Below are positions 1 through 60,037 of a stretch of DNA of 64,000 nucleotides, in pieces. The DNA comes from Schmidtea nova (taxonomy: Eukaryota): positions 283,030,001 to 283,094,000 of the forward strand of contig CM097882.1 of assembly GCA_044892505.1 (NCBI GenBank), in the 5' to 3' direction. The notes beneath the pieces are model-generated. The model was given only the letters and a program-made list of their open reading frames with translations. It was not told where the DNA came from and searched no databases. Every line of letters begins with the position of its first letter. Position 1 is the first letter of the stretch. Position numbers and translations under genes: made by a program.

Positions 1-1
1 A

Positions 2-3000
2 ATTGGATATATCTTTGTAAGTTATCGTCTTGGTTAGCGATTTTGTACACCATTCCCTAATATTCCTGAATAATGCTTCTTTTTCACTTTCGAATTTACA
101 CTCTTCTTTGTTTTTGGACATTATGATATTTCCTCTATCTAATAGCGTTAACAGTGTTTTCTGATCACAAACGAATTTTAATAGAAATCGTAATAACGCG
201 TTTTGTCCTTTGCTATATACTTCGTTTATATTTAACACCCATGTATCATTTTCGGATCTTTTCCATTTTATTAGCTTGCGTATTGTTTTGCAGTTACCGA
301 TTTTTATTGCTTCCTTTATTATATCACCTTTGATCAGTTCATCTATTTCCCAAGTGGCCTTCTCGATTATTTGTTTGAGCATTATCTGATTTGAGCTCCA
401 TATTGCGTGATTCAAGACTGTTTTGTTTTCTCTATCGCGTTCTGTCCAGTTGAAATCGGCATTTATCAAAAGGTCTATTATTGCTTTATCCGATTTGTAG
501 ATGGCTGCTACCATTAATGGTGTTTCTTGTTCGCTATTCCCAAAACCAAGGTGTTGGTTTGTTTCCTTAGCGATTTTTAGAAATTCTTTTACTCTCTCTA
601 CTTCTCCCCATTTTATGGCGTTATGTAATGCTGGTTGTCCTCCTATGTCTTCTAGTGAAAGTATTTCTGGAATCTTTTCCAGTAGTTCTGAAATGACTGG
701 TTTTGTTGGTAGTCCCCTTGCGTAATCACTAATTATCGACTGAATATCTCTTAATATATCGTCTCTGAAATGCCATTTTCCCATTATTTCTCTGGCTTTT
801 AGTACAATTTCCTTGTTTCTTTTTTCTCGTTGATTGTTCTCTGCTTCGGTGCTTTCATTGGTTGCTCTGAGCATATTCATTCTGGCTGTCTGGGATCTGG
901 TTATTATTCGTTCTTCTGGCGCTGTGGTTATTGTCTTTGGTACTTTTTTACATCTGCATGTATTAACGTATATTGGTCGTATCAATGGTCGATTAACAAG
1001 TTTTACCTTCACATTGTTTTCCTTTTTGTATATAACTTCGTAAGGGCCTTTTCCTGGTCTTTGTAGTTTTTTAACGGTTCCTGGTATTATTTCTGGGGTT
1101 TCTATCATTACCCAATCTCCGGGTTTAAGATCATTTGTTTTAACATTTTTCTTTTGATCGTGTAGGTCCTTGTAACTTTCTTGATAAAACTTTATGTTTA
1201 GTTCTGCTGTCTTCCATATCTCTTGCATTCGTTCTTTGAATTTGGTGACGTAATCATCTTCCTCCATATATTGAGACAAAGGTGGTTGATATTCAAGATC
1301 TATTGGCATATTGCATTCCCTTCCATACATTAATTGAAATGGACTCAATTTTGTTGCTGCGTGTATCGACATTCGGTATGCCATTAGACATAGCTTTATG
1401 TACTCATCCCAATCTGTTTGGTGTTTGCTTACATAATTGGATAACATTCGAATCAATGTGCCGTTAAATCTTTCCGTTTGTCCATTAGTTTGCGGATGAT
1501 ATGGTGACGTTCGTAATTTGGCTATTCTGAAGTAATTTGTTACTTCATCTAGTATTTCGCTCATAAAATTTGTTCCTTGATCTGTTAGTATTTGTTTCGG
1601 GGTTCCGTATCGACAACATATTTCCTCTACTAAAATTCTTGCTACGGTCTTTGCTTTTTGATCCGGCATCGCAAATGCTTCAGGGAATTTAGTCAAATAA
1701 TCCGTTATTACCAATATATATTGATTCCCGTTTAAACTTTCTGGCAATGGTCCTATTACATCCATCGCAATGGTAGTCATTGGTTCCGCTGGTATTGGCA
1801 TGGGTTTTAAGGGATTTTTCCATTTCTTCCCACTATCCTTTCTTGTGGCACAAGTTAAACAGTTCTTTATCCATTCCTTTACGTCTTCGTCCATTGTTGG
1901 CCAATAATATTTTTGTCTCATGCGATTTAATGTTTTCTTATCGGACATGTGTCCTCCCAACTTTCCGTCATGGTATTGAGTTATTATCTCTTTTCGTCTA
2001 TTACCTGGCAGACACATTAATCGTTTCTCTCCATCTCGTATTAATAACCATCCTTTTTCTATTGTGTATCGATGTTGGTATTTCCTCATGTGTTCCTTTA
2101 ACTCTGCATTGTCTTTGAATACATCCATATTTCGTGAGCTTAGGAATTCTATGATGGGTCTTAGTTCTTTATCCTCTTGCTGATCTTTCTTTAACTCACT
2201 GAAATCCAAATCCTCTGCTATCATTATGCATATTCTTTGCACTTCTGGGTCTGTTAGTTCTGGAAACGTTAATCTTGACATGCAATCTGCGTTGGCATTC
2301 GCTTTTCCTGATTTGAATTTTATATCTGGTGAATATTCTTGTAATTGCATCGCCCATCTCATTAATCTGCTGGATGTTTCCTTATGTTGTCCTAGCCATA
2401 CAAGTGGTTGATGGTCTGTGGTTATGCATATGACGTGTCCCCATAATAGATATTTGAAGTGTTTTATTGCTAATATTATTGCCAATGCTTCTCTTTCCGT
2501 TACTGAATAATTCTTCTCGTGTTTCTTGAATGTTCTGCTATAATATCCGATTACCCGCTCTTTTCCCTCGTCATCATATTGTCCTAACACTGCTCCTGCT
2601 GCATATCCACTTGCGTCGGTTGCGAGTAAAAATGGCTTTTTGAAGTCCGGGTGAACCAATATTGGTGCAGTTATTAGCTTATCTCTCAATGTTTCAAAGG
2701 CTGTTTGTTGTTCGCTTCCCCATATGAACGATACGTCTTTCTTTACTAGCTCCTGGATTGGTTTTGCAATCCCTGCGTAATCCTTTATGAATTTTCTATA
2801 GTAACCGCATAATCCGAGAAATTCTTGGATCTGCGTTATCGTCTTTGGTACTGGACATTCTTTTACTTTATCAATGTTTCTGGGATCTGGTTCCTTTCCT
2901 TTTGCGGACACAATATGTCCTAAGAATGTCACTTTCTCCTTTGCCCAATCGCATTTCGATGGTTTGAGCTTGAGTTTCCATTGTCTCAATCTAACAAATA

Positions 3001-6000
3001 CATCTCTGATATCTTGGATGTGTTGTTCAAATGTGCTTGAGTAGATCAGTAGGTCGTCAATGTAAACCATGCATTGTTTTATGCCGTGGGTAACGAAATT
3101 CATACATCTTTGAAATGATGCTGGCGCATTGGTTAGTCCGAATGGCATTTTCCTAAATTGGTACAAGTCTCTTCCGATAGTGAAAGCAGTTTTCTCTTTG
3201 TCTTCCTCCTTCATTTTAATTTGCCAGTATCCGCTTTTCAAATCTAATGATGTAAAGTATGCCGCTCCTTGTAATGTCAATAACATCTCGTTGATGTCTG
3301 GTAATGGGTATGTATCCCTTTTTGTAACTGTATTTAATCTCCGATAATCAATACAAAATCGTTGTGTTCCGTCTTTCTTTTTCACCATTACAACTGGGAA
3401 TTGCCACGGTGAGCAGCTTGGTTCAATTACTTCTGCGTCTAGCATTTTCTGTACCTCTGCTTCTGCTACTGATTTTTGCGCTTCAGCTAACTTGTATGGT
3501 CTTAAAGCAATCGGCGTTTCGTCTGTTAGTGGAATCGTATGTAGTGTGACGTCACATGTCCCTAGATCTAAATCGGATGCCGCGAATATGTCTTTATATT
3601 CTATCAGTAATCTTTCTAGCTGTTTCTTTTGATCCTCATTCAATAGTTGGCTATCAATGTTCCAAGTGGGTTCTTCCTCTTTTACTCCTTCTTTTATTGG
3701 TATTTCGATATCTATCATTGGAGTTAGTTTACCTAATCTTTCATTTTCATAAATTATTTTATCCTCTTCATCGAAATTTACTACATTTATTGGGATTTCT
3801 CCGTTGTCATTCGCACTCACTAATCCCCTTGCCATTGGCAACGACTTTCTCTTTTCAAATCTTTTACTGGGTTCAAAGATCATGTCACCTTCTATTGTAG
3901 GATCTATTTTTACGAAACATATTTTCTCTCTCCGTGCTGGTACGATTATTTGTTTCGAACTTGTTACTTTTGCTTCTATTGCGCATATCTGTCCTGTCCT
4001 ATCCTTCAATCTCATTGTTCCGAGGTCAATAACTATTTCTTTAAATAATGCTGGCATTAAATCTGTGCCTATAATGCATGGTACGCTTAGTGCTGGTATT
4101 ACTGCTACGTACGTTTCGATTTCCGTGTTTTGATGTTTTATCTTTACCCACCATCTTCCGGCAACTTCTACTACTTCTTTACTGCATGCTATTACGTGAA
4201 CGTTGGTTCTCTCGATATCCCGTCTTTGTTCTTGTGGTATCCATTTTATATCTATTGCTGAGATATTTGCTCCTGTATCGATCATCGCTTCTATTTCCCT
4301 TCCGTTAATTTCGATTGTTGTAGTTAATACTGGACCGGTGTTTGATGACATTACTGCAATTGTATGTGAGTCTCCTTGCGGATCTACGCTTCTGCACCGT
4401 CTCGTTCTATAGTCTTCTGGTATCATAGGATATATGTTTGTCATCGGCATCATTTGCATTGTATTTTGTCTCATCCCTGGTGTTGGTTCTTGGTACATGG
4501 TTGGTGGGGGTGCGTAACACTTCCACATTTCCGCTGGATTCTTTTCGACATACTGTGGTACTTGATTTTTAAATACTTGACCTCCTTCGTTATCATCATC
4601 ATCGTCGTCACTGGAATCGTCTTGGGTTCTGTACCCTTTCATTCTTTCCCATAGTCCTTTTCTCTCTTTCTTTAGTTGTTGTCTTGCTTGCTCGTTATTC
4701 ATTATCTTTTTAAATTTTCGTCCCACCTCTTCATCGGTTCCTTTCATTTTTGCCAGTATTTTTAGGAGTCTCTTTATTCGGTGAATATCTTTTGAATGAC
4801 CGTGTAATACCATTGTTTTAGCCAAAAATGGTAAGAATCCTACCACCAATTTCCAATTTACTTTCTTTTCTCTTTTATAGATGTCAAAACAGGCTAACAT
4901 TTGCGTTATTATTACCCGTATTATTTGTATAATTAGTATAACACCAAGTATTCCTGCCATCATTTGTCCAAATATTAAAAATCTTCCCCACATCGCTTTC
5001 ATCATGTTTTCCGTTGCCTTCTTAAAGTGGGCTGGTGACAATAATAATTCGTAATTTGGTCCACTTTGGTAATTTGTTCCTCCTGTTATTGTTACAATAC
5101 TGGATAACACCGCTTCTCGTCTTGCCGGAAATAGTATGTTTTGTCTTGCTGCTTCTAAATCCTTTGCACTATAGAATCCCATATTGCTTACATCTACGTC
5201 TTTAAATTTTCGTCCTTTTGATAGTTGCATTAATTCAAATTCTCTTGGTGCTGGTACCTCTGTTCTTGACGGAAACATAACCCAATTTCCGTCTGGTTTT
5301 TGGTATAGTGGTCCATATGCGTTGCTACAATTGAAAGGGTTTGGTTCGAAACTTACTGGATTTATGATTCTTGTCACTGGTTGTACATATCTTACTTTCC
5401 CTTTATATTCGATTTCTAGTTCGTTAGTACACTGACCTGGTTGTAGTTTTGTCATTGTCGCTACCTTCGCATTTGTCTTTTTACATATGTATACGTACAT
5501 GACCTCTCCGACTACTCTTCCAAAATGACCTTCTCTTAATGGTAATAATGGCATTGCACTATCCGGGTTTGTGATTGCTACTGCTAATTTTGTCTTTAAT
5601 ATTTCCCTATTTAATATGCAATCGTTGTTTATTAAATCGTAATACACTTTTTGTAGTGACGCTTGTCCTCTATGGAATAGAAAATCCATTTTATTGTTCA
5701 TGTAAAGGTGTAATTTAACATCGTTCGTGTGTACTTTGCGTTTCGCACTAGGTACTTCTTGTTTTGATACAAAAATGCCGGGGTAGTTGGTTTCCAACAT
5801 GGCTACTCCGCATTTCAAGGCTGTTTTTCCTTTTACAAACCTCATTCCGATATCTGCATCTGAGGTAATTAGTACCGTTGGTGTATTTCTCATTTTAATT
5901 TGTTTTTCTTGTGTTCGGGTTTCAATCTTTTTCTCTCCCCGTACTGTGTCTTGAAGTATTTTTCCTCTTGCTGCCTCGTCTTCTTCTTCCTCTTGGAAGG

Positions 6001-9000
6001 TTTTCCCTTGTATCTCATCGAATTCTGCTTCCTTTAACAGTTGTAGTTGACATTCCTTCCCTCGTATCTGGTAGGTTAGGGTTGACATACCAGTCTGACA
6101 AGTGTTTGACTCGATTTTGCACATAGGTAGAGTTTTCATTTCTCCCGTCGTTGGATCGAAGAATGCCTCGTACGTTTTTAGTTCCACTGTATACGTATCT
6201 ATTACCACTAGGTTTGTTGCTGCTACTCCGAATATTGGATATGTTGCTCCTTGGCAGTACCCTTCTCCTCCCGTAATAGCTCCTGCTACATAATATGTTT
6301 GTTGCAATATCACTCCCGTTTTTCCTCTTATCTTTACTCTATCTCTAGTCTCTACTTCTCCATGTTTAAATAATTTTTCACAGTCTTCTCCTTGCAGCAT
6401 TACCGATTCTCTTTCCGTTCCTGGCATCACGATTGCTGAATAATGGCGGTGCCCACAATAAAAAGCAAATCTGGTTTTATAAACTTTGCATTCTCTGACC
6501 ATTGTTCTTATCAGTTCAGCTTCCTGATATACGTGGTATAATTGTCTCTTTTTTAATGTTTTTAGCTCCGTTGGGGTTGCGTCTTTACATTGTTCTGTCC
6601 CTCGTAATGAGTATTTTTCACCTAATGCCATTTGATCACAATCGAATACTTCAAATGCTGTTGCTCCGTCAGTACTAATCATCCATATTAATATCATCAT
6701 AATGATAGAACTCAGGTTTAGTGATGATTTCCCGTTTCCTGTTCCCGACTTTTCCTTTTCCAATTCTCCCAATATCTCTTCGAATTTCTTTTTCATATTT
6801 TTGGCTTGGTTTTTCTTTTGGTTCGTTTTTGTGAATGTTTCCCATCCTCCTTTACTGATGATGTACGGTTCTATTTCTTTCTCTATAATTTTGGCTGTAT
6901 TCTTTATATGTCTTTCAAGTGCTGTGGGTTTCAGTCGACCTCTACTCAGTGTCAGCAGATTGTAGATGGTGTATGCCATAGCTATTAAATATTTGTTATC
7001 CGTCTCTGCTCCTTCCGTTACCTTCTTTATCAACATCGTGGTTCCTTGCCAATCTAGGTGGTTTGACCTTGTCTTCTCTTTTATTAATTCTGGTAGGATT
7101 GGTGCGATGGCGCTATGCAGTGATTTCGCCCTTTCGCTTATTTCATTTATTCTCCACCATTTCTTTAATTCTGGATCGATTATTGCCAGTATTTCCATTA
7201 ACATCTTTGATATCCATTCCTCGCCTTGGTATGTTTGTGTTGTTTCTTTTTCTTTCGTTTCGGCTATTTTATTTAGTTTCTTTAAACACAAATCCCATTG
7301 ATCCCGTCTTTTTTCCTCTCTTGATTTTATAACTACATTTGCTGGATCCATCTTGGGTCTACCTCTAGGTCGTTTATCCATTGTCGTGCCCGTTTCTACT
7401 AATCTTGTTTCTCGTCCAGTTTCTTCTGTGACGTCTCTTGGTTCATTGGCTCTTTCTTCTAACCATCTTTCCATTTCTTGTGTGAATTGTACGTTTTCTA
7501 CATTTGCCCTCCTTGCTTCCTCTTCTGCTATTTCATTTACTTCTTCTATGATTATTTCTTGTTCGACTTCATCTTCGGTGTTGGTTACCGGTATTGCTGT
7601 TGGTAATTCTTGAATTCTTTCGAAAATATTATCATCTTTCTCTTTTGTTAGCTCTATTAACTCCTCTAACATATCATCGCTATCTGTAAAAATTTCGTCT
7701 TCATCGTATGGTTCCGGTGGTGTTCTTTCTCTTGTCTCTCTTGGTGTTGTTCTAGTTTGTTCTGAGCTTGTTCCTGGAGTCATTACCGATTTCATTGGGC
7801 TCGGCGTACTCATACTTCCTTTTGGTTTCTTTTCCTCTTTCAATTTCAATGGTTGGCCTGCTATTGCTGCCACTGTCAATGTATTTGCGATATCTAATTG
7901 CGCTGGCGTTATTCCAATTTCCAAGCTGTTATCTAATGATCGTCCTTGGTGTTGTAAATGGAATGGTGGTTCATATCTCAATTTCTTTTTAATGTCTCGA
8001 ACTTTCTCCGCTATCCCTACCCAAAACTCTTCCTTTTCTTGGTTCGGATATACTATTCTTAGGTGTACTTTCTGTGGCGATTCCTGCGAGAATTCTTGGT
8101 TTCTCCATTTTTTAATTACGTGATCCAATTGTTCTGGACACCACTCGTTAACTCTTTTGTATTCGGCGATTGCTTTTGCTACTTTACGCAAGCATGTTAT
8201 GTCTTCTCCATTAACTACGAAAAAATCTGCGAGACCTTTTACTACTTTTCTCTTGCCGTGCGCATTGGTTTTTAATATTTCGACAAATTCCTCTGTTTTT
8301 TGTTTCTCTCTTTCCAACCACATGGTTGCCGTTTCTGGTCCGTCTATATCAGCTGGCATGGCTTTTCTTGTTACCATACAAACCCTTCCCGTTTCCGGTT
8401 TGTGATCGTCTTCTATGCCTATTTCGTATTCCTCTTCGTATTCGCCTGCTTTTGGTTCCCAACATTTTCCTCGTTCGTTCCACCGTTTTTCTACAGGTGT
8501 TCGTAATCGTCTGTTGAGATTGAGTTCTTCTAATACATCTTCCCATTCTGGCCAAATCCGCCAATTTCGATAAATGTCTACTATTTGTTGTAATTTATGC
8601 ACAACTTCTTTTTGTCGTTCCCGTTCTCTTTTCTCATCCTTAGCCGTTTCTCTTGGTGTATCGTCCATTCTGATAACGTGGATGGTTTGGTGATTATCCC
8701 ATATACCAATTTTATATAGCCGTCTTTCATCGTGATCCCATAATACATGTTCGTTGTATTTCATGATTATGTCATCTTCCCATTCTTCTTCTGGTTCTCT
8801 TTGTAATAGTGTCTCGTTGATGACATTTACTAATTCTTTTATGGTACAATCTGCTACCACTTCAATTTCTTTGGTATCCTCATTAGGTAACTCTACTGCA
8901 ATTTTCAGATCTGTTATTTTCCCTTGTCTGAACATTGCTTTTCCCATTTTGGCAATTACTTTTCCGTATGAGATCTGTGACCATCTCGTGTGACTTGTGT

Positions 9001-11701
9001 CACGTATGCACTCGATACATCGTTTCAACTTTTTGTATTCGCTTCTCATTAACTCCTTTCTATGTTTTTTGATTTGTGGGATGATTTGTTCTATCATGGA
9101 ATTTAGATTTCCTCGTAAGATTCGTCCTTTCTCATATTCTAACCGTGGTTTTATCTTCTTCTCGAAACACGTATTTGCTTCCTTTGCTACTTCTTGTAGG
9201 TTCTCTTCTCTCTTATCATCGCATATCGATAATGTTGTCACCTCTCCTGGCCATATGCCTGTTTCTATCAAATGCGTCCTTTTCTTCACTAGTCCATTCT
9301 GTGAATAGAGGAATTTGTTTTTATATGAACTCCCTAATCTATCCTCTACCCATTGGTAAATATCTTCCGTGAGTGGAGTTTTGATCCAAATCCTTGGCAA
9401 ACATGTTTTTATCTCTATTAGGATTATATATTCATGGAGTGGTTCTTTTAATAATTTTCCTAGGTATTGGCTTAGTGTTTCTACTTCCCGGCCTGGTAAC
9501 CACTCTTTATAGTTCATTTGTAATATCGCTCTCATGAATTTCCGATAGTGTTTCTTGTCGATGAACTCCTCATTATATATTACTTCTAGCGCGTTATCTA
9601 ATAATTTCTGGATCTCGTCCTCTTTTACTTGAATAGTTTCTGGCGTCTTTACTACTTCTATCTTTTTGTCTTCAATTTCCGGTTCGTTTAGCATATCTCC
9701 GGCTAGACTACTGACGTCACTATCCTCTTCGTCATCTGAAAAATTCTTTGCCTGGCCTCTCAACATGTTAATGTGTTTTATCTGGTTGATTTCACTTGGT
9801 GTATTTTCCGTTGATCTTGTTTCACTTTTAATAGCTTTTTGTGTTGATTCACTCTTGTCGTCTACTACTTCGACCTTTCTCAATTTTCGTTCTAACTCGT
9901 CTATTTCTCTCAACCGTCTTCGTATCATTTTCCCTTTAAATATTCGACTGATTCGTGTTTCGTGACGCACTGGCGATGGGATTCCTTCTGGTTCTATTTC
10001 CTTGATTACCATCACATTTCTTTTTGTCTCTACTACTCCCATGTTTTCCCATGTATCCGTTAGTTTCAATTTTACTTCTGGTGCACCTTCTATTTTTAGG
10101 AATGCTTCTCTGGGCAGTTTCGTTACTCCTGGAGCCATTTCATTCACTTTATTGAACAATATTTCTACTTCTTCCTTTATGTTATATTGGAATCGAAACA
10201 CGTGCTTGTTTGGCAAAATTACCATCATTCCTCTTTTCCCGAGTTTCCTTTTCTCTTCTTGGTTCCCTTCTTTTTCTACTTCCTTTTCTGTTTCTTTTTC
10301 TGCTTCTTCGTCTTCTTGTATTATCTCTTTTCGGCCTTCGTTGTTGGTTGGATTCGAGTTTGTTGGATTTATTTCTGGTACAGTCTCTTTCTCGTGGGTA
10401 TTTGTTTGATTGGTTGCTCTCATCATATTAATTCTTAGAGGTTGTCGTTCTCTTTCTTGCTGTTTTTGTTCCTCTTCTCTTTGTATTCTTGCCCATTCCT
10501 GAGCATGTCGTGCTTGACTTTCCCGATTCAATCGTTCGTTTTCGCTTTCTATTTTTCTCATCATATTGATTTGTTGTTGACCTGTTTGCGGATTTCCTCT
10601 GTTTGTATTGTTTATCAGCTCCGTCAATCTTTGAACCTCTTGCATTAAATGTATCTCTTTAGTGGTATTTTTATTTTGGTTATTATTATTACTATTTGGT
10701 TGGTTTCCGTATTCCGGTTGGTTTCCATTATTTGGCTGATTTCCATAATTCTGTCGGTTTCCACCAGTTGGTTGGTTTCCATAGTTTTGTCGGTTTCCGG
10801 TATTCTGCCAATTTCCTCGTTGATTGCTTCTTTGTCCGCAATTTCTTGATAGGTGTCCAGGTCGTCCACAATTAAAACAGGTTATTGTGTAACATCTGCT
10901 CTCTGAATGCCCTTTTACTCCACATTTTCCACAATTCAAGTTCTGATAACATTCTTGTTGCCAATGTCCCAATTTCCCACATGTTTTGCATTGTTTCGTT
11001 GGTCCTTGGGGGTTGTAATTGTTTTGATTTCCGTAATTTGATACTTTATTCCCTTCATTCCTTCGTTGCGGTGGTGGTCGGTTTAATTGTTGTGAATTTG
11101 GGATGTGGTTATTCAGGTTCACTTCTTGTTCGTTTTGTGCTGTATCCATAGCTAAATAGATTCTACCATCATTTCCTATCATGTGTAGTTCAAATCTATT
11201 AGCTGTTTCTAGTGCTTGGTCGATGGTTTTACAACCTTGGCATCCAACTTGCGCTCTTATGTCGGGTCTTCTTAATCCTCCCACAAAGATAGCTGCCATT
11301 AACTCCTCATTTATTGGACTGTCTTGATTGAAAATCAACTTTGCTAACTTTTTTAATTCGCTTGCATATACCGCATTCGATTCATTTATCTTTTGTTTCC
11401 TCATTGAGAATTCCGTGAATGCCTCATTCAATACTTTGTTTATTCCAAAGGTTTGTTGGAAAAAGTCCTTTATCGCTGACCAACTTGTAGGTGGATTAGT
11501 TCCATTTTTTGCTTCCAAATATAGATCTAATGCGCTATCTTTCAAATATAGCTGAATTCTGCTTACAGTTGTTTCTGGTTTCCACTTGCATACTTCCACG
11601 AATATGCCAAATTCCTTTAAGAAAGTTTCCAGTTTACTCGCATCTCCATTAAACGGTTCTCCGGAAAATTTGTCTTTTATCTCTTCTCTGGGTTCGCTCA
11701 T
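2..11701 (-). CDS. Single Gag-Ubl-Bcl2-Env-PR-RT-RH-IN-ankyrin polyprotein, at least 3900 aa, open at the window edge
   Basis: Anchor codons all share one frame (lowest codon coordinate = 2 mod 3): ATG 11699-11701, CCHC 10865, Ubl 8885 and 8063, GGW 6842, FYCG 6452, DTG 4277, YIDD 3053, GGH 1949, ankyrin 623. No ORF ending in this frame is listed in the track, consistent with no stop before position 1. The frame is open upstream to a TAA at 12161-12163. Confidence 0.9.
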   Translation of the reverse strand, partial: MSEPREEIKDKFSGEPFNGDASKLETFLKEFGIFVEVCKWKPETTVSRIQLYLKDSALDLYLEAKNGTNPPTSWSAIKDFFQQTFGINKVLNEAFTEFSMRKQKINESNAVYASELKKLAKLIFNQDSPINEELMAAIFVGGLRRPDIRAQVGCQGCKTIDQALETANRFELHMIGNDGRIYLAMDTAQNEQEVNLNNHIPNSQQLNRPPPQRRNEGNKVSNYGNQNNYNPQGPTKQCKTCGKLGHWQQECYQNLNCGKCGVKGHSESRCYTITCFNCGRPGHLSRNCGQRSNQRGNWQNTGNRQNYGNQPTGGNRQNYGNQPNNGNQPEYGNQPNSNNNNQNKNTTKEIHLMQEVQRLTELINNTNRGNPQTGQQQINMMRKIESENERLNRESQARHAQEWARIQREEEQKQQERERQPLRINMMRATNQTNTHEKETVPEINPTNSNPTNNEGRKEIIQEDEEAEKETEKEVEKEGNQEEKRKLGKRGMMVILPNKHVFRFQYNIKEEVEILFNKVNEMAPGVTKLPREAFLKIEGAPEVKLKLTDTWENMGVVETKRNVMVIKEIEPEGIPSPVRHETRISRIFKGKMIRRRLREIDELERKLRKVEVVDDKSESTQKAIKSETRSTENTPSEINQIKHINMLRGQAKNFSDDEEDSDVSSLAGDMLNEPEIEDKKIEVVKTPETIQVKEDEIQKLLDNALEVIYNEEFIDKKHYRKFMRAILQMNYKEWLPGREVETLSQYLGKLLKEPLHEYIILIEIKTCLPRIWIKTPLTEDIYQWVEDRLGSSYKNKFLYSQNGLVKKRTHLIETGIWPGEVTTLSICDDKREENLQEVAKEANTCFEKKIKPRLEYEKGRILRGNLNSMIEQIIPQIKKHRKELMRSEYKKLKRCIECIRDTSHTRWSQISYGKVIAKMGKAMFRQGKITDLKIAVELPNEDTKEIEVVADCTIKELVNVINETLLQREPEEEWEDDIIMKYNEHVLWDHDERRLYKIGIWDNHQTIHVIRMDDTPRETAKDEKRERERQKEVVHKLQQIVDIYRNWRIWPEWEDVLEELNLNRRLRTPVEKRWNERGKCWEPKAGEYEEEYEIGIEDDHKPETGRVCMVTRKAMPADIDGPETATMWLEREKQKTEEFVEILKTNAHGKRKVVKGLADFFVVNGEDITCLRKVAKAIAEYKRVNEWCPEQLDHVIKKWRNQEFSQESPQKVHLRIVYPNQEKEEFWVGIAEKVRDIKKKLRYEPPFHLQHQGRSLDNSLEIGITPAQLDIANTLTVAAIAGQPLKLKEEKKPKGSMSTPSPMKSVMTPGTSSEQTRTTPRETRERTPPEPYDEDEIFTDSDDMLEELIELTKEKDDNIFERIQELPTAIPVTNTEDEVEQEIIIEEVNEIAEEEARRANVENVQFTQEMERWLEERANEPRDVTEETGRETRLVETGTTMDKRPRGRPKMDPANVVIKSREEKRRDQWDLCLKKLNKIAETKEKETTQTYQGEEWISKMLMEILAIIDPELKKWWRINEISERAKSLHSAIAPILPELIKEKTRSNHLDWQGTTMLIKKVTEGAETDNKYLIAMAYTIYNLLTLSRGRLKPTALERHIKNTAKIIEKEIEPYIISKGGWETFTKTNQKKNQAKNMKKKFEEILGELEKEKSGTGNGKSSLNLSSIIMMILIWMISTDGATAFEVFDCDQMALGEKYSLRGTEQCKDATPTELKTLKKRQLYHVYQEAELIRTMVRECKVYKTRFAFYCGHRHYSAIVMPGTERESVMLQGEDCEKLFKHGEVETRDRVKIRGKTGVILQQTYYVAGAITGGEGYCQGATYPIFGVAATNLVVIDTYTVELKTYEAFFDPTTGEMKTLPMCKIESNTCQTGMSTLTYQIRGKECQLQLLKEAEFDEIQGKTFQEEEEDEAARGKILQDTVRGEKKIETRTQEKQIKMRNTPTVLITSDADIGMRFVKGKTALKCGVAMLETNYPGIFVSKQEVPSAKRKVHTNDVKLHLYMNNKMDFLFHRGQASLQKVYYDLINNDCILNREILKTKLAVAITNPDSAMPLLPLREGHFGRVVGEVMYVYICKKTNAKVATMTKLQPGQCTNELEIEYKGKVRYVQPVTRIINPVSFEPNPFNCSNAYGPLYQKPDGNWVMFPSRTEVPAPREFELMQLSKGRKFKDVDVSNMGFYSAKDLEAARQNILFPARREAVLSSIVTITGGTNYQSGPNYELLLSPAHFKKATENMMKAMWGRFLIFGQMMAGILGVILIIQIIRVIITQMLACFDIYKREKKVNWKLVVGFLPFLAKTMVLHGHSKDIHRIKRLLKILAKMKGTDEEVGRKFKKIMNNEQARQQLKKERKGLWERMKGYRTQDDSSDDDDDDNEGGQVFKNQVPQYVEKNPAEMWKCYAPPPTMYQEPTPGMRQNTMQMMPMTNIYPMIPEDYRTRRCRSVDPQGDSHTIAVMSSNTGPVLTTTIEINGREIEAMIDTGANISAIDIKWIPQEQRRDIERTNVHVIACSKEVVEVAGRWWVKIKHQNTEIETYVAVIPALSVPCIIGTDLMPALFKEIVIDLGTMRLKDRTGQICAIEAKVTSSKQIIVPARREKICFVKIDPTIEGDMIFEPSKRFEKRKSLPMARGLVSANDNGEIPINVVNFDEEDKIIYENERLGKLTPMIDIEIPIKEGVKEEEPTWNIDSQLLNEDQKKQLERLLIEYKDIFAASDLDLGTCDVTLHTIPLTDETPIALRPYKLAEAQKSVAEAEVQKMLDAEVIEPSCSPWQFPVVMVKKKDGTQRFCIDYRRLNTVTKRDTYPLPDINEMLLTLQGAAYFTSLDLKSGYWQIKMKEEDKEKTAFTIGRDLYQFRKMPFGLTNAPASFQRCMNFVTHGIKQCMVYIDDLLIYSSTFEQHIQDIRDVFVRLRQWKLKLKPSKCDWAKEKVTFLGHIVSAKGKEPDPRNIDKVKECPVPKTITQIQEFLGLCGYYRKFIKDYAGIAKPIQELVKKDVSFIWGSEQQTAFETLRDKLITAPILVHPDFKKPFLLATDASGYAAGAVLGQYDDEGKERVIGYYSRTFKKHEKNYSVTEREALAIILAIKHFKYLLWGHVICITTDHQPLVWLGQHKETSSRLMRWAMQLQEYSPDIKFKSGKANANADCMSRLTFPELTDPEVQRICIMIAEDLDFSELKKDQQEDKELRPIIEFLSSRNMDVFKDNAELKEHMRKYQHRYTIEKGWLLIRDGEKRLMCLPGNRRKEIITQYHDGKLGGHMSDKKTLNRMRQKYYWPTMDEDVKEWIKNCLTCATRKDSGKKWKNPLKPMPIPAEPMTTIAMDVIGPLPESLNGNQYILVITDYLTKFPEAFAMPDQKAKTVARILVEEICCRYGTPKQILTDQGTNFMSEILDEVTNYFRIAKLRTSPYHPQTNGQTERFNGTLIRMLSNYVSKHQTDWDEYIKLCLMAYRMSIHAATKLSPFQLMYGRECNMPIDLEYQPPLSQYMEEDDYVTKFKERMQEIWKTAELNIKFYQESYKDLHDQKKNVKTNDLKPGDWVMIETPEIIPGTVKKLQRPGKGPYEVIYKKENNVKVKLVNRPLIRPIYVNTCRCKKVPKTITTAPEERIITRSQTARMNMLRATNESTEAENNQREKRNKEIVLKAREIMGKWHFRDDILRDIQSIISDYARGLPTKPVISELLEKIPEILSLEDIGGQPALHNAIKWGEVERVKEFLKIAKETNQHLGFGNSEQETPLMVAAIYKSDKAIIDLLINADFNWTERDRENKTVLNHAIWSSNQIMLKQIIEKATWEIDELIKGDIIKEAIKIGNCKTIRKLIKWKRSENDTWVLNINEVYSKGQNALLRFLLKFVCDQKTLLTLLDRGNIIMSKNKEECKFESEKEALFRNIREWCTKSLTKTITYKDISN
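250..650 (-). other. Ankyrin-repeat region fused downstream of integrase (element 1)
   Basis: GQPALHNAIKWGEVREVKEFLK, EQETPLMVAAIYKSDKAIIDLLINADFNWTERD and ENKTVLNHAIWSSNQIMLKQII match the ankyrin TPLHxA...V.xLL pattern at about 33-aa spacing. Confidence 0.8.
1000..2000 (-). other. Integrase domain (element 1)
   Basis: YHDGKLGGH...CLTC zinc motif, AMDVIGPLP, LTDQGTNF, PYHPQTNGQTERFN, and C-terminal GKGPYEV. Confidence 0.97.
2290..3560 (-). other. Reverse transcriptase and RNase H (element 1)
   Basis: RFCIDYRRLN, LDLKSGYWQI, MPFGLTNAPASFQR, VYIDDLLI, FLGLCGYYRKFI, LATDASGYAAGAVL, YSVTEREALA, TDHQPL. Confidence 0.98.
3990..4330 (-). other. Retroviral-type aspartic protease (element 1)
   Basis: IEINGREIEAMIDTGANISAI ... 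CIIGTDLM. Confidence 0.95.
4800..6720 (-). other. Envelope glycoprotein, chuvirus-G / herpes gB-like (class III fusogen-like), element 1
   Basis: Hydrophobic signal SIIMMILIWMISTDGATA, then a Cys-rich ectodomain of about 550 aa (FEVFDC, YHVYQE, VRECKV..FYCGHRHY, NDCILNREILK..AITNP, GRVVGEVMYVYICK), then TM FLIFGQMMAGILGVILIIQII. Family assignment is from recalled motifs. Confidence 0.75.
6830..7300 (-). other. Bcl-2-like domain (element 1)
   Basis: BH2-like TAKIIEKEIEPYIISKGGWETF, preceded by BH1-like IKKVTEGAETDNKYLIAMAYTIY. It occupies the same position as a clearer copy in element 2. Confidence 0.6.
7860..10228 (-). other. Cluster of 2-4 ubiquitin-like/UBX-like beta-grasp domains (element 1)
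   Basis: About 8670-8910: LKIAVELPNEDTKEIEVVADCTIKEL...MKYNEHVLWD..RRLYKIGIWD..TIHVI. About 7860-8070: KVHLRIVYPNQEKEEFWVGIAEKVRDIKKKL..FHLQHQGRSLD. Weaker candidates at about 9225-9430 (LIETGIWPGEVTTL) and 10005-10228 (MMVILPNKHVFRF..LKLTDTWENMGV). Confidence 0.55.
10830..11701 (-). other. Gag (capsid-like region plus three CCHC zinc knuckles), element 1
   Basis: PFNGDASKLETFLKEF...YLKDSALDLY, then CKTCGKLGHWQQEC, CGKCGVKGHSESRC, CFNCGRPGHLSRNC. Confidence 0.93.
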
Positions 11702-12677
11702 TTCAATTCCGCTGTCTGTAGTTATTTTACTTTCGTTTCCTCTTGTTTCTAGTTCACTGTTAGGTTCGTCACTCGAATTTCGGTCGATCTCAGTTTCTTT
11801 TGCTGATTCGTTATCTGATGCTTTACTATCGTTATCGGTATCGTCACTTTCTGTTTCTTGTTCTACTTCGTCTTCTATTTCTTCTATATAATCGTTGTTG
11901 GTTTTGTCGACTTCTATTTCACTTATTGGGTTTCTCTCGGGTTCTGCTTGATTTTCTTTGTTGCTTGAACTGTTGCTTGTTACTGATAATTTATCGTTTT
12001 CGATAATCGACTTTTGTATTATTATCTGCCTTGCTTTACTTCCTTTTGGGCCTTTCTGATTATTATTCTTGGTAGCTTTATTCTTTTCTGCTGGTTTTAT
12101 TATGACACTCTTTTCTCCTTTTCTCAACGGAATTACTTTTGTATACTCAATTTTCCTGTCTTATCGTGTTCCGATTCTTTTCTTCCTTAGTTGATTGGTT
12201 TGGTTTGATTGATTTATCTAAAATACAAATGTCACTTCAACGATACTCTATTGTTATCGTTGCGCTTTTATTCCCTTTTTACGGGACTTCTCATTACTGG
12301 GTTTCTATTATTTTTCCCCATTCCCAGATTCCCCTTTATTTAAGTCTATTTAAATTATCTATATACTAGTCACAATTATCTATTTAGTCATAACAATTAT
12401 CTATCGGTTATTAAAATACATCAATTATTTTTCCCGCGGTCTCCCAATTTATTTGTCGTTCGAACGCTCTAATTCCCTGAGTCATTTGACTCGATTATTA
12501 TTTTATCATCTCTTTATCTTTCTCTCTGCTAGCCTCTAATTATTAATTCTGCCGGTCTTTCCGGTCAGCTCCTATTTCTCAATTCTACTTGCATGCATTA
12601 TTTTAGGTCGCATAATCAGCTTTACTCGCATTTCTCTATTATCGGTGCGCACTATTCTCATTATCGTCGACGATCAC

Positions 12678-13794: not shown

Positions 13795-14256
13795 TTATAA
13801 ATAAACTACAATTTTATCAGCTACAGAGAAATTGCACATGGGGCACTCATCACACTTATTCGCACAGTTTTTACAGAATCGAAAATGTCCACATGGTAAA
13901 AACATTATTTGGATTTCACTGTTTTCGCATATGTAACATTGTTTATATTGTTTTGCTGCCTCGACCCCTTGCGACATCCATCGGTTATATGTTAGGCTTA
14001 ACTGCTGTTCTATATGTCGGCATCTGATATTCAACTCGGCATCCTCTAATCGTGCTTTGTACCATTTATATCGCGTATTTATATCGAGTTTATTTACTTT
14101 CTCTATGATTTTTATTAACTCAGTTGTTTCCTCAGTTTGTGTCGTAGGTTCCTCATATTCGGATGCTCTTATTCGGGTTATTTTTTCGCAGACTGTCTCA
14201 AATGTTTCGTTCTCGGTGTTGAAAAATTCCTCGATTTCTTTCAGTTTTTCCTCCAT
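13795..14256 (-). CDS. IAP/MDM2-type C-terminal RING-HC protein (153 aa, no BIR domain) between PBS and gag
   Basis: CYICENSEIQIMFLPCGHFRFCKNCANKCDECPMCNFSVADKIVVYL-stop: C3HC4 spacing with the short hydrophobic tail typical of IAP RINGs; coiled-coil-like N-terminus. Confidence 0.85.
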   Translation of the reverse strand: MEEKLKEIEEFFNTENETFETVCEKITRIRASEYEEPTTQTEETTELIKIIEKVNKLDINTRYKWYKARLEDAELNIRCRHIEQQLSLTYNRWMSQGVEAAKQYKQCYICENSEIQIMFLPCGHFRFCKNCANKCDECPMCNFSVADKIVVYL

Positions 14257-45277: not shown

Positions 45278-46071
45278 TGTTGGGTATTTTGTTGAAAGTC
45301 GGTTCTAATTTCTGACTCCTGGTGTTCTTTTAACAAATAATTAACCCAACACAATAACCTTTATTTCAATATCACACTTTATCACAATGATTGAACAATA
45401 TAAGAACTGTCTTTTCACACTGAACTTAACTGCTTTCAAGTCACTTGCTGCAAGGGATAAGTCTCCCAACGGAAGATCTCCCTTTCTGGTGCGCAAACAA
45501 ATGAATTAAATTTTACTCTACAACACTACCTTTTCGGACTCTTCTTCTAATTTTAATCTGTTCATTTTGAAATCTTATCTCTTCGACCACTGGCCCCACA
45601 TTGCAATTTGCTTCTCCTTTTATAGTGCTTCCTCCTTAATGCTTGATTGTTCTGTCTCCCAATTTTGACATTTTAATCTACGACTCAAATTAAACTGTCA
45701 TATTGTAATTTAGTAGCTCTCGCCGTTTCCACATCCTTAGAGCAAATTGAACTGTCACTTCGCTTGAGCGGGTTTCTCTCCTCTCTCGGGCTCTCCATTG
45801 GCTCGGGTTTCCCATTGTCTCGGGCTTTCCCTTAGCCAATTAATTCTTAATTAATATTTTAAATTTTTAATTGTTTCTTTCTGGGGACCCCCCATCGATT
45901 TTATTTTTATTTATTTGAATTCGTCTCATAATTTGGCACACACCCATACCAATTTCCCCCATGATATATTAATTTTAAATTTTATTAATTTTTTAATTAA
46001 TGTTTTAATATTTGGTGATTTTTGCAATTTTATTACTTTTAAATTTTGAGTCACTTTGACAAACCCCAACA
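45278..46071 (-). repeat. 3' LTR of element 2 (794 bp)
   Basis: TGTTGGG...CCCAACA termini; identical to 60038-60831 except at 45769 and 45922. Confidence 0.98.
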
Positions 46072-46086
46072 TATCTCCCCCCTTTA
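46072..46086 (-). promoter_or_regulatory. Polypurine tract of element 2
   Basis: Minus strand AAAGGGGGGAGATA immediately before the 3' LTR TG. Confidence 0.9.
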
Positions 46087-47058
46087 ATTAAGATTCGTCC
46101 TCTAATCTATCTTATAATTCAATATATAAATATGAGAGCACCCCGAAAGGCAACTTTTACTGCTACTAATAATAATAATTCTACTAAATAGAACAATAAT
46201 AAAAATAATATTTTGTCCGTCCAAATCTAAATTTACTTTTCCAAAATATTTAACACCTCTTTTTAACGAGAAGGGATGTCAATGACNNNNNNNNNNNNNN
46301 NNNNNNNNNNNNNNNNNNNNNNNNNNNNNNNNNNNNNNNNNNNNNNNNNNNNNNNNNNNNNNNNNNNNNNNNNNNNNNNNNNNNNNNNNNNNNNNNNNNN
46401 NNNNNNNNNNNNNNNNNNNNNNNNNNNNNNNNNNNNNNNNNNNNNNNNNNNNNNNNNNNNNNNNNNNNNNNNNNNNNNNNNNNNNNNNNNNNNNNNNNNN
46501 NNNNNNNNNNNNNNNNNNNNNNNNNNNNNNNNNNNNNNNNNNNNNNNNNNNNNNNNNNNNNNNNNNNNNNNNNNNNNNNNNNNNNNNNNNNNNNNNNNNN
46601 NNNNNNNNNNNNNNNNNNNNNNNNNNNNNNNNNNNNNNNNNNNNNNNNNNNNNNNNNNNNNNNNNNNNNNNNNNNNNNNNNNNNNNNNNNNNNNNNNNNN
46701 NNNNNNNNNNNNNNNNNNNNNNNNNNNTCTTTATCTCGTTTATTTTTTTTGAGCCAGTGAACTGGCAAAAATCTAAATTTAAATTTAACTATGATATTAA
46801 ATCCTGTCATTCACGGAGCAATGGGCTGGCGAATGATGGGTGTTTATTCGTATTATAAAAGAAAATATCGAGACATATCAATCTTCCACTTCAGAATTTA
46901 GAAAATATCGACCTTTGTATAGAACTTTTGAAAAATGTATACTGCATTTATCAGAAGCAATGAAATTCGGCTTAATCTGACTATCTTAAGCTTTATTTTA
47001 AGTAATCTCGGAGGCATCAAAATAAGGGAAAATTCTCACGTAATTTTTTTATTTATTT

Positions 47059-47101
<43 letters not shown>

Positions 47102-47237
47102 TTAATAATAATAATAATAATGTGTTATTTATTGTCAAAAAATTAAATATTCATTGATATATTCATCAACGATGTTAGCAACTGTTGTAATAGATAATAA
47201 GTAGTGTGTTCGAGAAAAAAAAATTTCAATGATAATG

Positions 47238-47276
<39 letters not shown>

Positions 47277-47729
47277 TACCTGATCCTACCTCCTTATCTC
47301 ATGCTCATAATATTACTATAATACTAATAATAAGTGACGGTCGCCTTCTTCAGTCCCTGTCCAGGGATCCAAGCCCCGGTGACTGAAATTGGACACTTTC
47401 ATTTTATTATTATGTCCATATTTAATTTCAATAACTTTGTAACTTTGATAACGTCGGTGTATAATAACAATGCTGATATACTACAATTAATAATACGATT
47501 CTGATACTATTAATAATAATAAACTCTGAATTTTTAAATCATTGATTATAATTCTGACAATTTTTATTTTGATAATAAATTTTTTTTTTGATTTTTTTTT
47601 TTTTTTTTTATATTTAATTAAATTTTGCATTATTTTTATCAATAATGATTTGGGGGTTACCATTAAACAAATAAGAGACAAAATTCGCTAAAGTTTTATT
47701 TATAAATTTATAAATACAAATATAAAATT

Positions 47730-49134: not shown

Positions 49135-49551
49135 TTGCTAAAATTATTGAATTTTTAATTTACTTTAATTTTAGAATTTGAAACTATGATCGAGGTTGGG
49201 CACCCAAAGGATATCGTCTCAATCAATAGTTGTATAAATAAAAATATTTAATTAATTACCTATTTATTTGAATTTGAAAAATTCGGAATCTCAGAAATTT
49301 TGAAATTCAAAATTTTGAGTTTTTGAAATTTTAAATCTAACGGTTTAACACGTATCCTATATACCCTCTTAAATTTCCTTCCCCTTTTTAATTTCTTCTT
49401 TTTATCCAATCAAATTCATTTGCCAAGCGATCCTTGAAAGCAGTTTTACATCAAAAATAAAAAGTGTTTCATAAAATGTAATGCTATCAATAAATAAATA
49501 ATAAATTCGACACTACTGTTACTCATATTGCATGCAGAAATCATTATCTTA

Positions 49552-50720: not shown

Positions 50721-50967
50721 ATTAATAAAATTTTATTAATGTAGCTTGATGGGGCTGGATTTCTATTATACCTCTGTTTGATTGCTTCATCTTCCTTCCG
50801 TTTTGATCGTAATGGGTATTGTTTTAACTCTTCCACCGGCACCTTTTTACAGCGGTTTACATGAACAACTATTGTTCCAGCTTTTTTATTATTCTGTGGA
50901 CGCAACTTTAGATTAGTCTCTGTAGCATCACATACTACATATGGTCCTTTAAAAGGTCTTTGCAGTT

Positions 50968-58520: not shown

Positions 58521-58586
58521 ATTAACCTTGTCTCTTTGTGGTGACGGTGATGTTGACGGAGATCTTGATTTAGCATAACAATTTCT

Positions 58587-59632: not shown

Positions 59633-60016
59633 ATTATTCTGATATTTCGTTTGGCTTCTTAATTGACAAAATGGTCGAGTTGGTAACGTTTTCTCTCGTC
59701 TAAATTTTAAAATATCAATTATTAAATTTACCCTTTATTAGTCTTTATTTTCTCAAACTTCAATTTTCACTTTTTCACGATTCAACTTTTATTCACACAA
59801 AAATTTCCAATTTATTTCTAAGAATTTACTTTTCAATATAATTAATTTATTTTCACAATTCTTTTTCAACTTTTTCAATATTTTCAATTTATTTTCAATG
59901 CTTTCAGTTTCAAATTTCTCTCAATATCTACTCTATTCACTAACGATATCACCGCTTTTCACACGTTTTATTGTAATTTATTCAATTAATTCTCCACCAA
60001 TTCTTCACCGACTTTG

Positions 60017-60034: not shown

Positions 60035-60037
60035 AAA

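What the first reader, a model, noticed from the sequence alone, without database searches (positions are those of the whole stretch)
1..880. Ankyrin repeats fused in frame downstream of integrase
Seen: after the GPY motif the frame continues for about 330 more codons to the window edge, with at least three ankyrin-like repeats. Known: the usual Gypsy integrase C-terminal add-on is a chromodomain. Inference: this is either an integration-targeting module or, since a candidate cleavage motif (MNMLRATN) precedes it, a released host-interaction protein like poxviral ANK proteins.
Basis: partly seen in the sequence, partly recalled or inferred. Interest (0 to 1): 0.75.

Follow-up and report, generated by a model that had tools for sequence, protein, structure and literature searches.

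The report
Ankyrin tail on giant Gypsy polyprotein
A real ankyrin-repeat domain is fused in frame behind the integrase of a giant, envelope-carrying Gypsy-type retroelement, which fits the planarian 'Burro' kind of element where ankyrin repeats were already reported, so it is a new member of a known oddity and not a new class.

Summary
On the minus strand, window 2-12160 is one stop-free frame of 4053 codons that runs off the left edge. Its order is Gag with three CCHC knuckles, a rhabdo/chuvirus-type fusion glycoprotein, protease, RT, RNase H, integrase, then 346 more codons after the GPY motif. That tail scores above Pfam's ankyrin cut-offs. It folds as an ankyrin solenoid with three confident repeats and about six or seven in all. 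Its codon usage matches the rest of the polyprotein.

The quoted cleavage-like motif belongs to a short motif, [IM]NM[ML]R, found four times in this polyprotein against 0.04 expected. One copy sits exactly between integrase and the tail.

The architecture matches the published giant 'Burro'/GYPSM1 Gypsy-like elements of planarians. Those have a huge single polyprotein, env in frame between gag and pol, and ankyrin repeats.

Metagenomic relatives (about 50% identical pol) all carry 360-1400 residues after integrase, with changing content. Two carry ankyrin modules at other positions. The second, broken element in the window has none.

The most likely role is a protease-released host-interaction module; this is inferred, not shown. 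No F-box/PRANC was seen, and the C-terminus lies outside the window.

The parts
2..12160 (-). Single stop-free polyprotein frame of element 1 (4053 codons, first Met at codon 154). It is open at the window's left edge, so the C-terminus is not seen.
11270..11551 (-). Gag core. The Retrotrans_gag match is below Pfam's cut-off (21.8 versus 24.1 bits).
10838..10993 (-). Three CCHC zinc knuckles (nucleocapsid part of Gag).
10556..10570 (-). Copy 1 of the recurring [IM]NM[ML]R motif (residues 531-535).
10418..10432 (-). Copy 2 of the motif (residues 577-581). Its nine-residue context is nearly the same as that of copy 4.
9758..9772 (-). Copy 3 of the motif (residues 797-801).
4877..6727 (-). Class III fusion glycoprotein of the rhabdovirus/chuvirus type, in frame between gag and pol. 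It runs from a signal-like hydrophobic segment to a transmembrane segment.
4049..4321 (-). Retropepsin-type aspartic protease.
2909..3385 (-). Reverse transcriptase.
2333..2722 (-). RNase H.
926..2008 (-). Integrase: H2C2 zinc domain, catalytic core and the GPY-containing C-terminal part.
857..880 (-). Copy 4 of the motif with its context (residues 3761-3768). It marks the boundary between integrase and the tail.
2..865 (-). The tail: 288 visible residues after the motif. It has two N-terminal helices, then the ankyrin solenoid, then a helix, and is cut by the window edge.
131..703 (-). Ankyrin-repeat domain, about six or seven repeats. The three best-defined repeats are at about 356-652.
13795..14256 (-). 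153-residue ORF upstream of gag that ends in an IAP-type RING finger. It may be an accessory gene of the same element; this is not shown.
45278..60835 (-). Second, distantly related element of the same architecture, LTR to LTR. It is the in-window comparator and has no ankyrin module.
45278..46074 (-). 3' LTR of element 2 (798 bp, 99.6% identical to the 5' LTR).
60038..60835 (-). 5' LTR of element 2.
49853..59734 (-). Broken gag-glycoprotein-pol gene of element 2, given as one part. Against relatives it shows roughly 2-3 frame changes and 2-4 in-frame stops.

Best explanation
The ankyrin repeats are a genuine accessory domain at the visible C-terminal end of the polyprotein of an intact giant Gypsy-type (Metaviridae) retrovirus-like element. 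The element is of the kind described in planarians as Burro/GYPSM1. One huge frame encodes Gag, an in-frame fusion glycoprotein taken from a negative-strand RNA virus, protease, RT, RNase H, integrase and then extra modules.

The tail is translated as part of the polyprotein. It is most likely cut off by the element's own aspartic protease at the [IM]NM[ML]R site that separates it from integrase. Once free, the six-to-seven-repeat ankyrin solenoid would act as a protein-binding module on a host pathway. The company it keeps points to cell-death, ubiquitin or innate-immune signalling: an IAP-type RING ORF in this element, an ISG20-like ORF in its neighbour, and apoptosis and ubiquitin domains in Burro.

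Shown: the frame, the domain identity, the fold, the motif recurrence, and the variable post-integrase modules in relatives.
Inferred: cleavage at the motif, release of the tail, and the host target.
For: Part of the element:
- The frame is unbroken and the domain order is clear.
- The tail's codon usage correlates with the rest of the polyprotein at r 0.887, against 0.871 +/- 0.061 for control windows. Its GC3 is 0.32. AT-rich ORFs elsewhere in the window give r 0.67-0.69 and GC3 0.15-0.20.

Ankyrin identity and fold.

Motif:
- It occurs four times against 0.04 expected, at two places after the zinc knuckles, at residue 797 and at the integrase/tail boundary.
- Its centre is a Met-Met or Met-Leu pair. 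That fits the hydrophobic P1/P1' preference of retropepsins, which is established knowledge.
- The nine-residue contexts of copies 2 and 4 score 39, against a shuffle mean of 28.8.

The post-integrase region is a variable module slot:
- All 17 metagenomic relatives extend 360-1400 residues past integrase with differing content.
- P0209 has its ankyrin module between the glycoprotein and the protease. P0223 has one far behind integrase. These two modules are homologous to each other (32% identity, E 7e-42). An integrase-tethering role would not survive such moves.
- In the five near-identical P0209 copies, the variable columns pile up in the ankyrin and post-integrase parts: 14 of 783 columns against 7 of 3274, Fisher p 3e-6.

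Published precedent: Burro/GYPSM1 has a 4873-residue polyprotein, env in frame between gag and pol, three CCHC knuckles and ankyrin repeats (PMC6431247).

The best viral structural match of the tail is the polyprotein of a planarian nidovirus whose ankyrin domain was proposed to be an IkB mimic (PMC6211748).
Against: - No cleavage has been observed. The motif is absent from the PR/RT and RNase H/IN boundaries and is not conserved in relatives, so it could be some other short linear motif.
- The tail resembles the relatives' ankyrin modules only at the generic ankyrin level, about 21% identity and 28 bits, no better than unrelated ankyrin proteins.
- No close copy of the tail exists in 1.84 billion representative proteins. 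Conservation among copies of this element is therefore untested.
- The end of the ORF is outside the window.
- The Burro hallmarks BIR, BCL2-like, MATH and dUTPase were not found here.
- The host was not identified by any tool. A planarian is inferred only from the AT-rich flanks and the literature.
Confidence: 0.6

Rival explanations
1. The ankyrin domain stays attached to integrase and steers integration by binding a chromatin or nuclear protein. It would be a functional replacement for the chromodomain of chromoviruses.
For: It sits exactly where Gypsy chromodomains sit, right after the GPY part of integrase, and this integrase has no chromodomain. Ankyrin repeats are protein-binding modules. 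Cleavage at the motif is not demonstrated.
Against: - A motif that recurs at other domain borders separates it from integrase.
- In relatives the ankyrin module lies between the glycoprotein and the protease, or hundreds of residues behind integrase.
- Nine relatives place a protease-like domain, not a targeting domain, directly behind integrase.
Confidence: 0.2
2. The tail is a passenger: a host ankyrin exon picked up recently or fused by chance, with no role for the element.
For: No close relative of the tail is found anywhere. Only one copy is visible. The second element in the window lacks it.
Against: - 346 stop-free codons have a chance probability of about 2e-12.
- Codon usage and GC3 match the element, not the AT-rich surroundings.
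- The junction carries the element's own recurring motif.
- No host-like donor above about 35% identity appears in the exhaustive search.
- Ankyrin modules are kept in intact relatives.
Confidence: 0.08
3. The ankyrin domain serves the particle itself, for example in trafficking or assembly, by binding the cytoplasmic tail of the in-frame glycoprotein or Gag. It would not target a host defence pathway.
For: In relative P0209 the ankyrin module lies directly behind the glycoprotein's membrane anchor, on the cytoplasmic side. An element that makes Gag, envelope and Pol from one chain needs ways to bring the products together.
Against: - Most relatives with the same glycoprotein have no ankyrin module at all: 15 of 17. 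It is therefore not needed for the shared life cycle.
- Variation concentrates in the accessory parts, which fits an interface with the host better.
Confidence: 0.1

Closest known systems
Burro / GYPSM1 giant Gypsy-like LTR retrotransposons of planarians (Jurka 2007; Grohme et al. 2018; reviewed in PMC6431247)
   Same: - One enormous polyprotein frame.
- A typical Gag with three CCHC knuckles.
- env in frame between gag and pol, with likeness to mononegavirus fusion glycoproteins.
- PR-RT-RH-IN order.
- Ankyrin repeats and RING/apoptosis-type accessory domains.
- Accessory ORFs next to the polyprotein.
- An AT-rich host genome.
   Different: BIR, BCL2-like, MATH/TRAF and dUTPase-like motifs were not detected in the visible 4053 residues. 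No sequence comparison with Burro could be made. The place of the ankyrin repeats in Burro is shown only in a figure that is not held. The host of this window was not identified.
Chromoviruses (Ty3/Gypsy elements with a chromodomain at the integrase C-terminus)
   Same: An extra protein-binding domain is appended in frame right after the GPY part of a Gypsy integrase.
   Different: The domain is an ankyrin solenoid, not a chromodomain. A recurring cleavage-like motif separates it from integrase. In relatives the module is not tied to integrase.
Ankyrin domain in the single-ORF polyprotein of Planarian secretory cell nidovirus (PMC6211748)
   Same: An ankyrin domain is carried inside a giant viral polyprotein, downstream of the replicative enzymes, and is proposed to be released by proteolysis. 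It is the best structural match of the tail in the viral library (E 3.3e-7, TM 0.67 on the query, 270 columns).
   Different: It is an RNA virus with unrelated enzymes. Identity is only 20%. Three repeats were reported there, against about six or seven here. A shared origin is not shown, and I did not make the direct sequence comparison.
Poxvirus ankyrin / PRANC (F-box-like) host-range proteins
   Same: They are virus-encoded ankyrin-repeat proteins thought to bind host factors. Several poxvirus ankyrin proteins appear among the structural matches.
   Different: The defining C-terminal PRANC/F-box was not found in the visible part. Those are separate genes of DNA viruses, not polyprotein domains.
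Arthropod Gypsy and BEL/Pao elements that captured chuvirus-like glycoproteins (PMC7642597; PMC13524379)
   Same: An LTR retroelement carries a glycoprotein of the same Pfam family (Monjiviricetes_fusion).
   Different: In those elements the glycoprotein is described as a gene next to pol. Here it lies inside the gag-pol frame. No ankyrin module is mentioned in the one of these papers that I searched for the word.

Membership tests
Ankyrin repeat domain (Pfam clan Ank) | Profile match above the curated cut-off. | tested here: met
   Ank_2 scores 42.1/40.5 bits (cut-off 27.3), Ank_4 32.4 (22.7), Ank_3 27.0 (22.3) and Ank 22.6 (21.1).
Ankyrin repeat domain (Pfam clan Ank) | Stacked helix-turn-helix repeat solenoid. 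| tested here: met
   In the AlphaFold model made with an alignment, blocks over residues 40-170 mostly have pLDDT 84-95 and show paired helices. Foldseek aligns 200-230 columns with gankyrin, Bcl-3 and MIB1 ankyrin domains at rmsd 3.5-5 A.
Ty3/Gypsy (Metaviridae) LTR retroelement | Pol domain order PR-RT-RNase H-IN, with an H2C2 zinc domain and a GPY motif in integrase. | tested here: met
   Pfam coordinates. GPY is at residue 3705.
Ty3/Gypsy (Metaviridae) LTR retroelement | Long terminal repeats flanking the element. | tested here: inconclusive
   For element 1 the 3' end is outside the window and no 5' LTR boundary could be fixed. The related element 2 has 798-bp LTRs that are 99.6% identical.
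Burro/GYPSM1-like giant planarian Gypsy elements | A single giant polyprotein with env in frame between gag and pol. | tested here: met
   One 4053-codon frame. Monjiviricetes_fusion (E 4.5e-69) lies between the CCHC knuckles and the protease. This matches the description in PMC6431247.
Burro/GYPSM1-like giant planarian Gypsy elements | Ankyrin repeats in the polyprotein. | tested here: met
Burro/GYPSM1-like giant planarian Gypsy elements | BIR, BCL2-like, MATH/TRAF, Ubi2/SUMO-like and dUTPase-like motifs. | tested here: not met
   None was found at E up to 0.1-0.5 in the whole protein or in pieces. Only an IAP-type RING was found, in a separate upstream ORF. More domains could lie beyond the window edge.
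Burro/GYPSM1-like giant planarian Gypsy elements | Sequence similarity to Burro elements, and a planarian host. | not tested
   No Burro sequence was returned by any tool, and fetching one was left out under the bar on animal proviruses. The host is inferred only from flanks of 20-30% GC and the >70% A/T reported for Schmidtea (PMC11410931).
Chromovirus | A chromodomain at the integrase C-terminus. | tested here: not met
   No chromo match.
Poxvirus-type ANK/PRANC proteins | A C-terminal PRANC/F-box-like domain after the ankyrin repeats. | tested here: inconclusive
   There is no PRANC or F-box match at E up to 10 in the visible 333 residues, but the true C-terminus lies outside the window.
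IkB-like ankyrin inhibitors | Specific likeness to the IkB/NF-kB ankyrin domain above other ankyrin proteins. | tested here: inconclusive
   Bcl-3 is rank 6 among PDB folds, with scores like those of gankyrin, MIB1 and EHMT1. The sequence matches are generic ankyrin proteins.

The most novel reading that the evidence does not exclude
Two unrelated giant-polyprotein agents of planarians have each taken up a host-type ankyrin domain as an immune-evasion (IkB-like) module, or exchanged it. One is this envelope-carrying Gypsy-type endogenous retrovirus and the other is the planarian nidovirus. The retroelement would release its copy by its own protease at a dedicated site behind integrase. That would make the post-integrase region of these elements a swappable 'accessory gene slot', comparable to the accessory genes of complex retroviruses.
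Probability: 0.15. Interest if true: 0.65.

Novelty: new member of a known kind. Interest (0 to 1): 0.4.

Why it matters
Retroelements rarely carry host-interaction domains, and Gypsy integrases are known for chromodomains, not ankyrin repeats. This window shows an apparently intact example of a little-studied group. In this group Gag, a captured RNA-virus fusion protein, Pol and changing accessory modules are all made from one chain. The modules seen are ankyrin, an IAP-type RING, an ISG20-like nuclease, extra protease-like domains and Ig domains.

It also gives a concrete place to look for evidence of polyprotein processing: a motif repeated four times. And it links the ankyrin tail structurally to the ankyrin domain of a planarian RNA virus.

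The basic fact, ankyrin repeats in a giant planarian-type Gypsy polyprotein, has been in the literature since 2007-2019. The gain is therefore detail and a new lineage, not a new principle.

Tried and rejected
- Word search for long proteins sharing the tail: nothing found.
- Exhaustive search of 1.84 billion representatives with the 288-residue tail: 2145 hits, all generic multi-ankyrin proteins at about 23-41% identity. None of the best 150 has any Gag, Pol or glycoprotein similarity. The ten best by single-domain score are plain ankyrin arrays. No donor and no close copy was found, which is uninformative about copies in the host genome.
- Single-sequence AlphaFold of the tail: unusable, pLDDT 45. 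It was replaced by a model built with an alignment.
- Search for a matching 'junction motif' in 12 relatives: none is above shuffles. Exact 4-mer recurrence in relatives: nothing.
- Word search with the glycoprotein region: it returned only five relatives already known.
- tRNA scan and Rfam scan of the window to identify the host or a primer-binding partner: both empty.
- Bacterial promoter/terminator scan of 1-1200: irrelevant to a eukaryotic element, and not used.
- Grohme et al. 2018 could not be read.
- Rejected: a chromodomain-type add-on (no match), a chance open frame (p about 2e-12), and a host exon fused by insertion (codon usage and motif).
Full report
**What is there**

The finding lies on the minus strand. 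Window 2-12160 (-) is one stop-free frame of 4053 codons that runs off the left edge of the window. Pfam places the following along it:
- a weak Retrotrans_gag match and three CCHC knuckles (residues 391-441);
- a Monjiviricetes-type viral fusion glycoprotein (E 4.5e-69), bounded by a signal-like hydrophobic segment (1812-1836) and a transmembrane segment (2392-2428);
- a retroviral protease (2614-2704), RT (2926-3084) and RNase H (3147-3276);
- the integrase zinc domain and core (3385-3556);
- Ank_2 at 3845-3934 (42.1 bits, cut-off 27.3).

The GPY motif is at residue 3705, and 346 codons follow it.

**Is it more than chance, and does it belong to the element?**

- From the base composition of the tail, the chance of 346 codons without a stop is about 2e-12. 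The other five frames of window 1-1090 hold 9-42 stops each.
- The tail's codon frequencies correlate with the rest of the polyprotein at r 0.887. Random 288-codon windows of the same polyprotein give 0.871 +/- 0.061.
- Its GC3 is 0.32, against 0.30-0.33 elsewhere in the polyprotein. Two AT-rich ORFs elsewhere in the window give r 0.67-0.69 and GC3 0.15-0.20.

The tail is therefore part of the same gene, not a host exon read through by accident.

**The ankyrin domain**

- On the tail alone, four ankyrin profiles pass their cut-offs.
- PDB sequence matches are designed ankyrin proteins covering tail residues about 60-231.
- A single-sequence AlphaFold run failed (pLDDT 45).
- With a 22-sequence alignment (A1) the model reached mean pLDDT 72.8, with most blocks over residues 40-170 at 84-95. 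It shows three canonical helix pairs, a capping pair before them and two less confident pairs after them.
- Foldseek against the PDB aligns 200-230 columns with seven-repeat ankyrin domains: gankyrin, Bcl-3, MIB1, EHMT1 and RNase L.
- No PRANC, F-box or enzymatic domain appears in the visible part. The true C-terminus is outside the window.

**The motif in front of the tail**

Its core, [IM]NM[ML]R, occurs four times in the polyprotein against 0.04 expected. Two copies lie behind the zinc knuckles (531, 577), one at 797, and one between integrase and the tail.

The nine-residue contexts of the copies at 577 and 3761 are nearly identical. They score 39, against a shuffle mean of 28.8 (sd 2.5), and 39 was also the highest score any of 200 shuffles reached.

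A Met-Met or Met-Leu centre fits the hydrophobic P1/P1' preference of retropepsins, which is established knowledge. Cleavage itself is an inference. The motif is not seen at the PR/RT or RNase H/IN borders, and relatives show no comparable recurrence.

**Relatives**

- Neither the word search nor the exhaustive search of 1.84 billion representatives found a close copy of the tail. The hits are generic multi-ankyrin proteins, and none carries Gag, Pol or glycoprotein similarity.
- A search with the RT-IN region found unnamed metagenome proteins of 2300-4057 residues (ENA, JGI, Logan and NCBI assemblies, one labelled as from a bacterial bin). They are 39-51% identical in pol and almost all carry the same glycoprotein family.
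- Of the 17 mapped relatives, 16 show the order glycoprotein, RT, IN, mostly with a protease between glycoprotein and RT. Seven of them also show a Gag/zinc-knuckle match. The 17th, P0223, begins within pol and shows no glycoprotein.
- All 17 continue 360-1400 residues past integrase. Beyond the conserved GPY part this extension varies by lineage. Nine have a protease-like domain directly behind integrase, and two have immunoglobulin domains.
- Two have ankyrin modules. In P0209 the module lies between the glycoprotein's anchor and the protease (2122-2332). In P0223 it lies about 620 residues behind integrase and in front of a further protease-like domain. These two modules are homologous to each other (32% identity over 225 residues, E 7e-42). 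The window's tail resembles them only at the generic level: about 21% identity and 28 bits, which ranks fifth among unrelated ankyrin proteins.
- P0209 stands for five near-identical, full-length copies. Their few differences concentrate in the ankyrin and post-integrase parts: 14 variable columns in 783, against 7 in 3274, Fisher p 3e-6.

**The second element in the window**

A distant relative lies at 45278-60835 (-). It is 32-40% identical in protein and has 798-bp LTRs that are 99.6% identical.

Its gag-glycoprotein-pol gene is broken. Alignment to relatives shows roughly 2-3 frame changes and 2-4 in-frame stops. It has no ankyrin module.

Behind integrase it carries ORFs with hydrophobic, membrane-like stretches. 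It also has a 322-residue ORF weakly like the ISG20 exonuclease (PDB 1wlj, E 6e-4).

**Comparison with the literature**

Arkhipova and Yushenova (PMC6431247) describe the giant Gypsy-like Burro/GYPSM1 elements of the planarian Schmidtea mediterranea:
- a 4873-residue ORF1 polyprotein (5140 residues in a Dugesia relative);
- a typical Gag with three CCHC knuckles;
- env in frame between gag and pol, with hits to mononegavirus fusion glycoproteins;
- accessory motifs including RING, MATH, BIR, BCL2-like, SUMO-like and ankyrin repeats;
- accessory ORFs that in other species are domains of the polyprotein.

This window's element matches that architecture point by point. It has AT-rich flanks (20-30% GC), like the >70% A/T Schmidtea genome (PMC11410931). 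A separate upstream ORF (13795-14256) carries an IAP-type RING.

It lacks detectable BIR, BCL2-like, MATH and dUTPase motifs in the visible part. I therefore file it as a new member or lineage of that known kind, not as Burro itself. I could not compare sequences with Burro, and no tool identified the host.

**The nidovirus parallel**

In the viral structure library, the tail's best match is the replicase polyprotein of Planarian secretory cell nidovirus (E 3.3e-7, TM 0.67 on the query, 270 columns, 20% identity). That RNA virus also carries an ankyrin domain inside a single giant polyprotein. Its authors proposed that the domain came from the host and acts as an IkB mimic (PMC6211748). This is a lead, not proof. 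Other giant-virus and poxvirus ankyrin proteins follow within two orders of magnitude.

**How it most likely works**

- Shown: the tail is translated with the polyprotein unless splicing intervenes, it is an ankyrin solenoid, and a recurring motif marks its border.
- Inferred: the element's protease frees it, and it then binds a host protein. The likely pathways are cell death, ubiquitin or innate signalling, judging by the accompanying RING and ISG20-like ORFs and by the Burro domain set.
- The changing position of ankyrin modules in relatives argues against an integrase-tethered targeting role.
- I put about 0.6 on the released host-interaction reading, 0.2 on integrase-tethered targeting, about 0.1 on a role in the particle's own assembly, and under 0.1 on a functionless passenger.

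- I also did not fetch Burro or the planarian nidovirus by accession.
- The continuation left of position 1 could not be retrieved.
- The N runs were left as they are.

- While reasoning about the second element's ORF table, I worked out where one of its interruptions lies.
- I recalled from memory a short cleavage-site peptide of a human retrovirus as an analogy.

Noticed in passing
window 4877-6727 (-): A rhabdovirus/chuvirus-type class III fusion glycoprotein (Pfam Monjiviricetes_fusion, E 4.5e-69) lies inside the gag-pol frame, with a signal-like segment before it and a transmembrane anchor after it. One chain would have to cross the membrane twice in order to leave Gag and Pol on the cytoplasmic side.
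   Followed up: partly
window 13795-14256 (-); also 15115-15699 (-) and 16016-16492 (-): Upstream of gag on the same strand is a 153-residue ORF ending in an IAP-type RING finger (Pfam 43.8 bits; XIAP/cIAP RING E 2e-10). Two more ORFs there have no matches. GC stays at 0.35-0.39 up to about 18 kb and then falls to 0.2-0.28, so these may be accessory genes of element 1.
   Followed up: partly
window 12660-13320: Three families of tandem repeats (units of about 30-55 nt) lie between the RING ORF and the start of the polyprotein frame.
   Followed up: no
window 10691-10816 (-): An 18-nt periodic repeat encodes a Gly/Asn/Gln/Pro-rich stretch right after the zinc knuckles.
   Followed up: no
window 45278-60835 (-): This is a second element of the same architecture but a distant lineage. 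It has young LTRs (99.6% identical), yet its polyprotein gene is broken. Behind integrase it carries ORFs with hydrophobic, membrane-like stretches and a 322-residue ORF (48166-49134) weakly like the ISG20 exonuclease (E 6e-4), instead of ankyrin repeats.
   Followed up: partly
proteins P0209-P0253 (metagenome relatives): The relatives occur as clusters of 5 and 21 near-identical full-length polyproteins, on contigs only slightly longer than the ORF (12.6-16.9 kb). Nine of 17 have an extra protease-like domain behind integrase, several have two protease domains before RT, and two carry immunoglobulin domains.
   Followed up: partly
tail model m7ed231b52aa0 (window 2-865, -): The best match in the viral structure library is the polyprotein of Planarian secretory cell nidovirus, which also has an ankyrin domain. 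This hints at a planarian host and a shared source of the domain.
   Followed up: partly
window 62082-63014 (+): A third RT/RNase H fragment, about 30% identical to element 1, lies on the opposite strand.
   Followed up: no
window 34385-35149 (-): An ORF matches organellar/viral type B DNA polymerase (DNA_pol_B_2, E 4e-8). It may be a Maverick/Polinton-like remnant.
   Followed up: no
window 18098-18158 and 18397-18456: A 61-nt inverted duplicate (96.7% identical) flanks the N run at 18165-18396. It may be an assembly feature at the edge of element 1's GC plateau.
   Followed up: no
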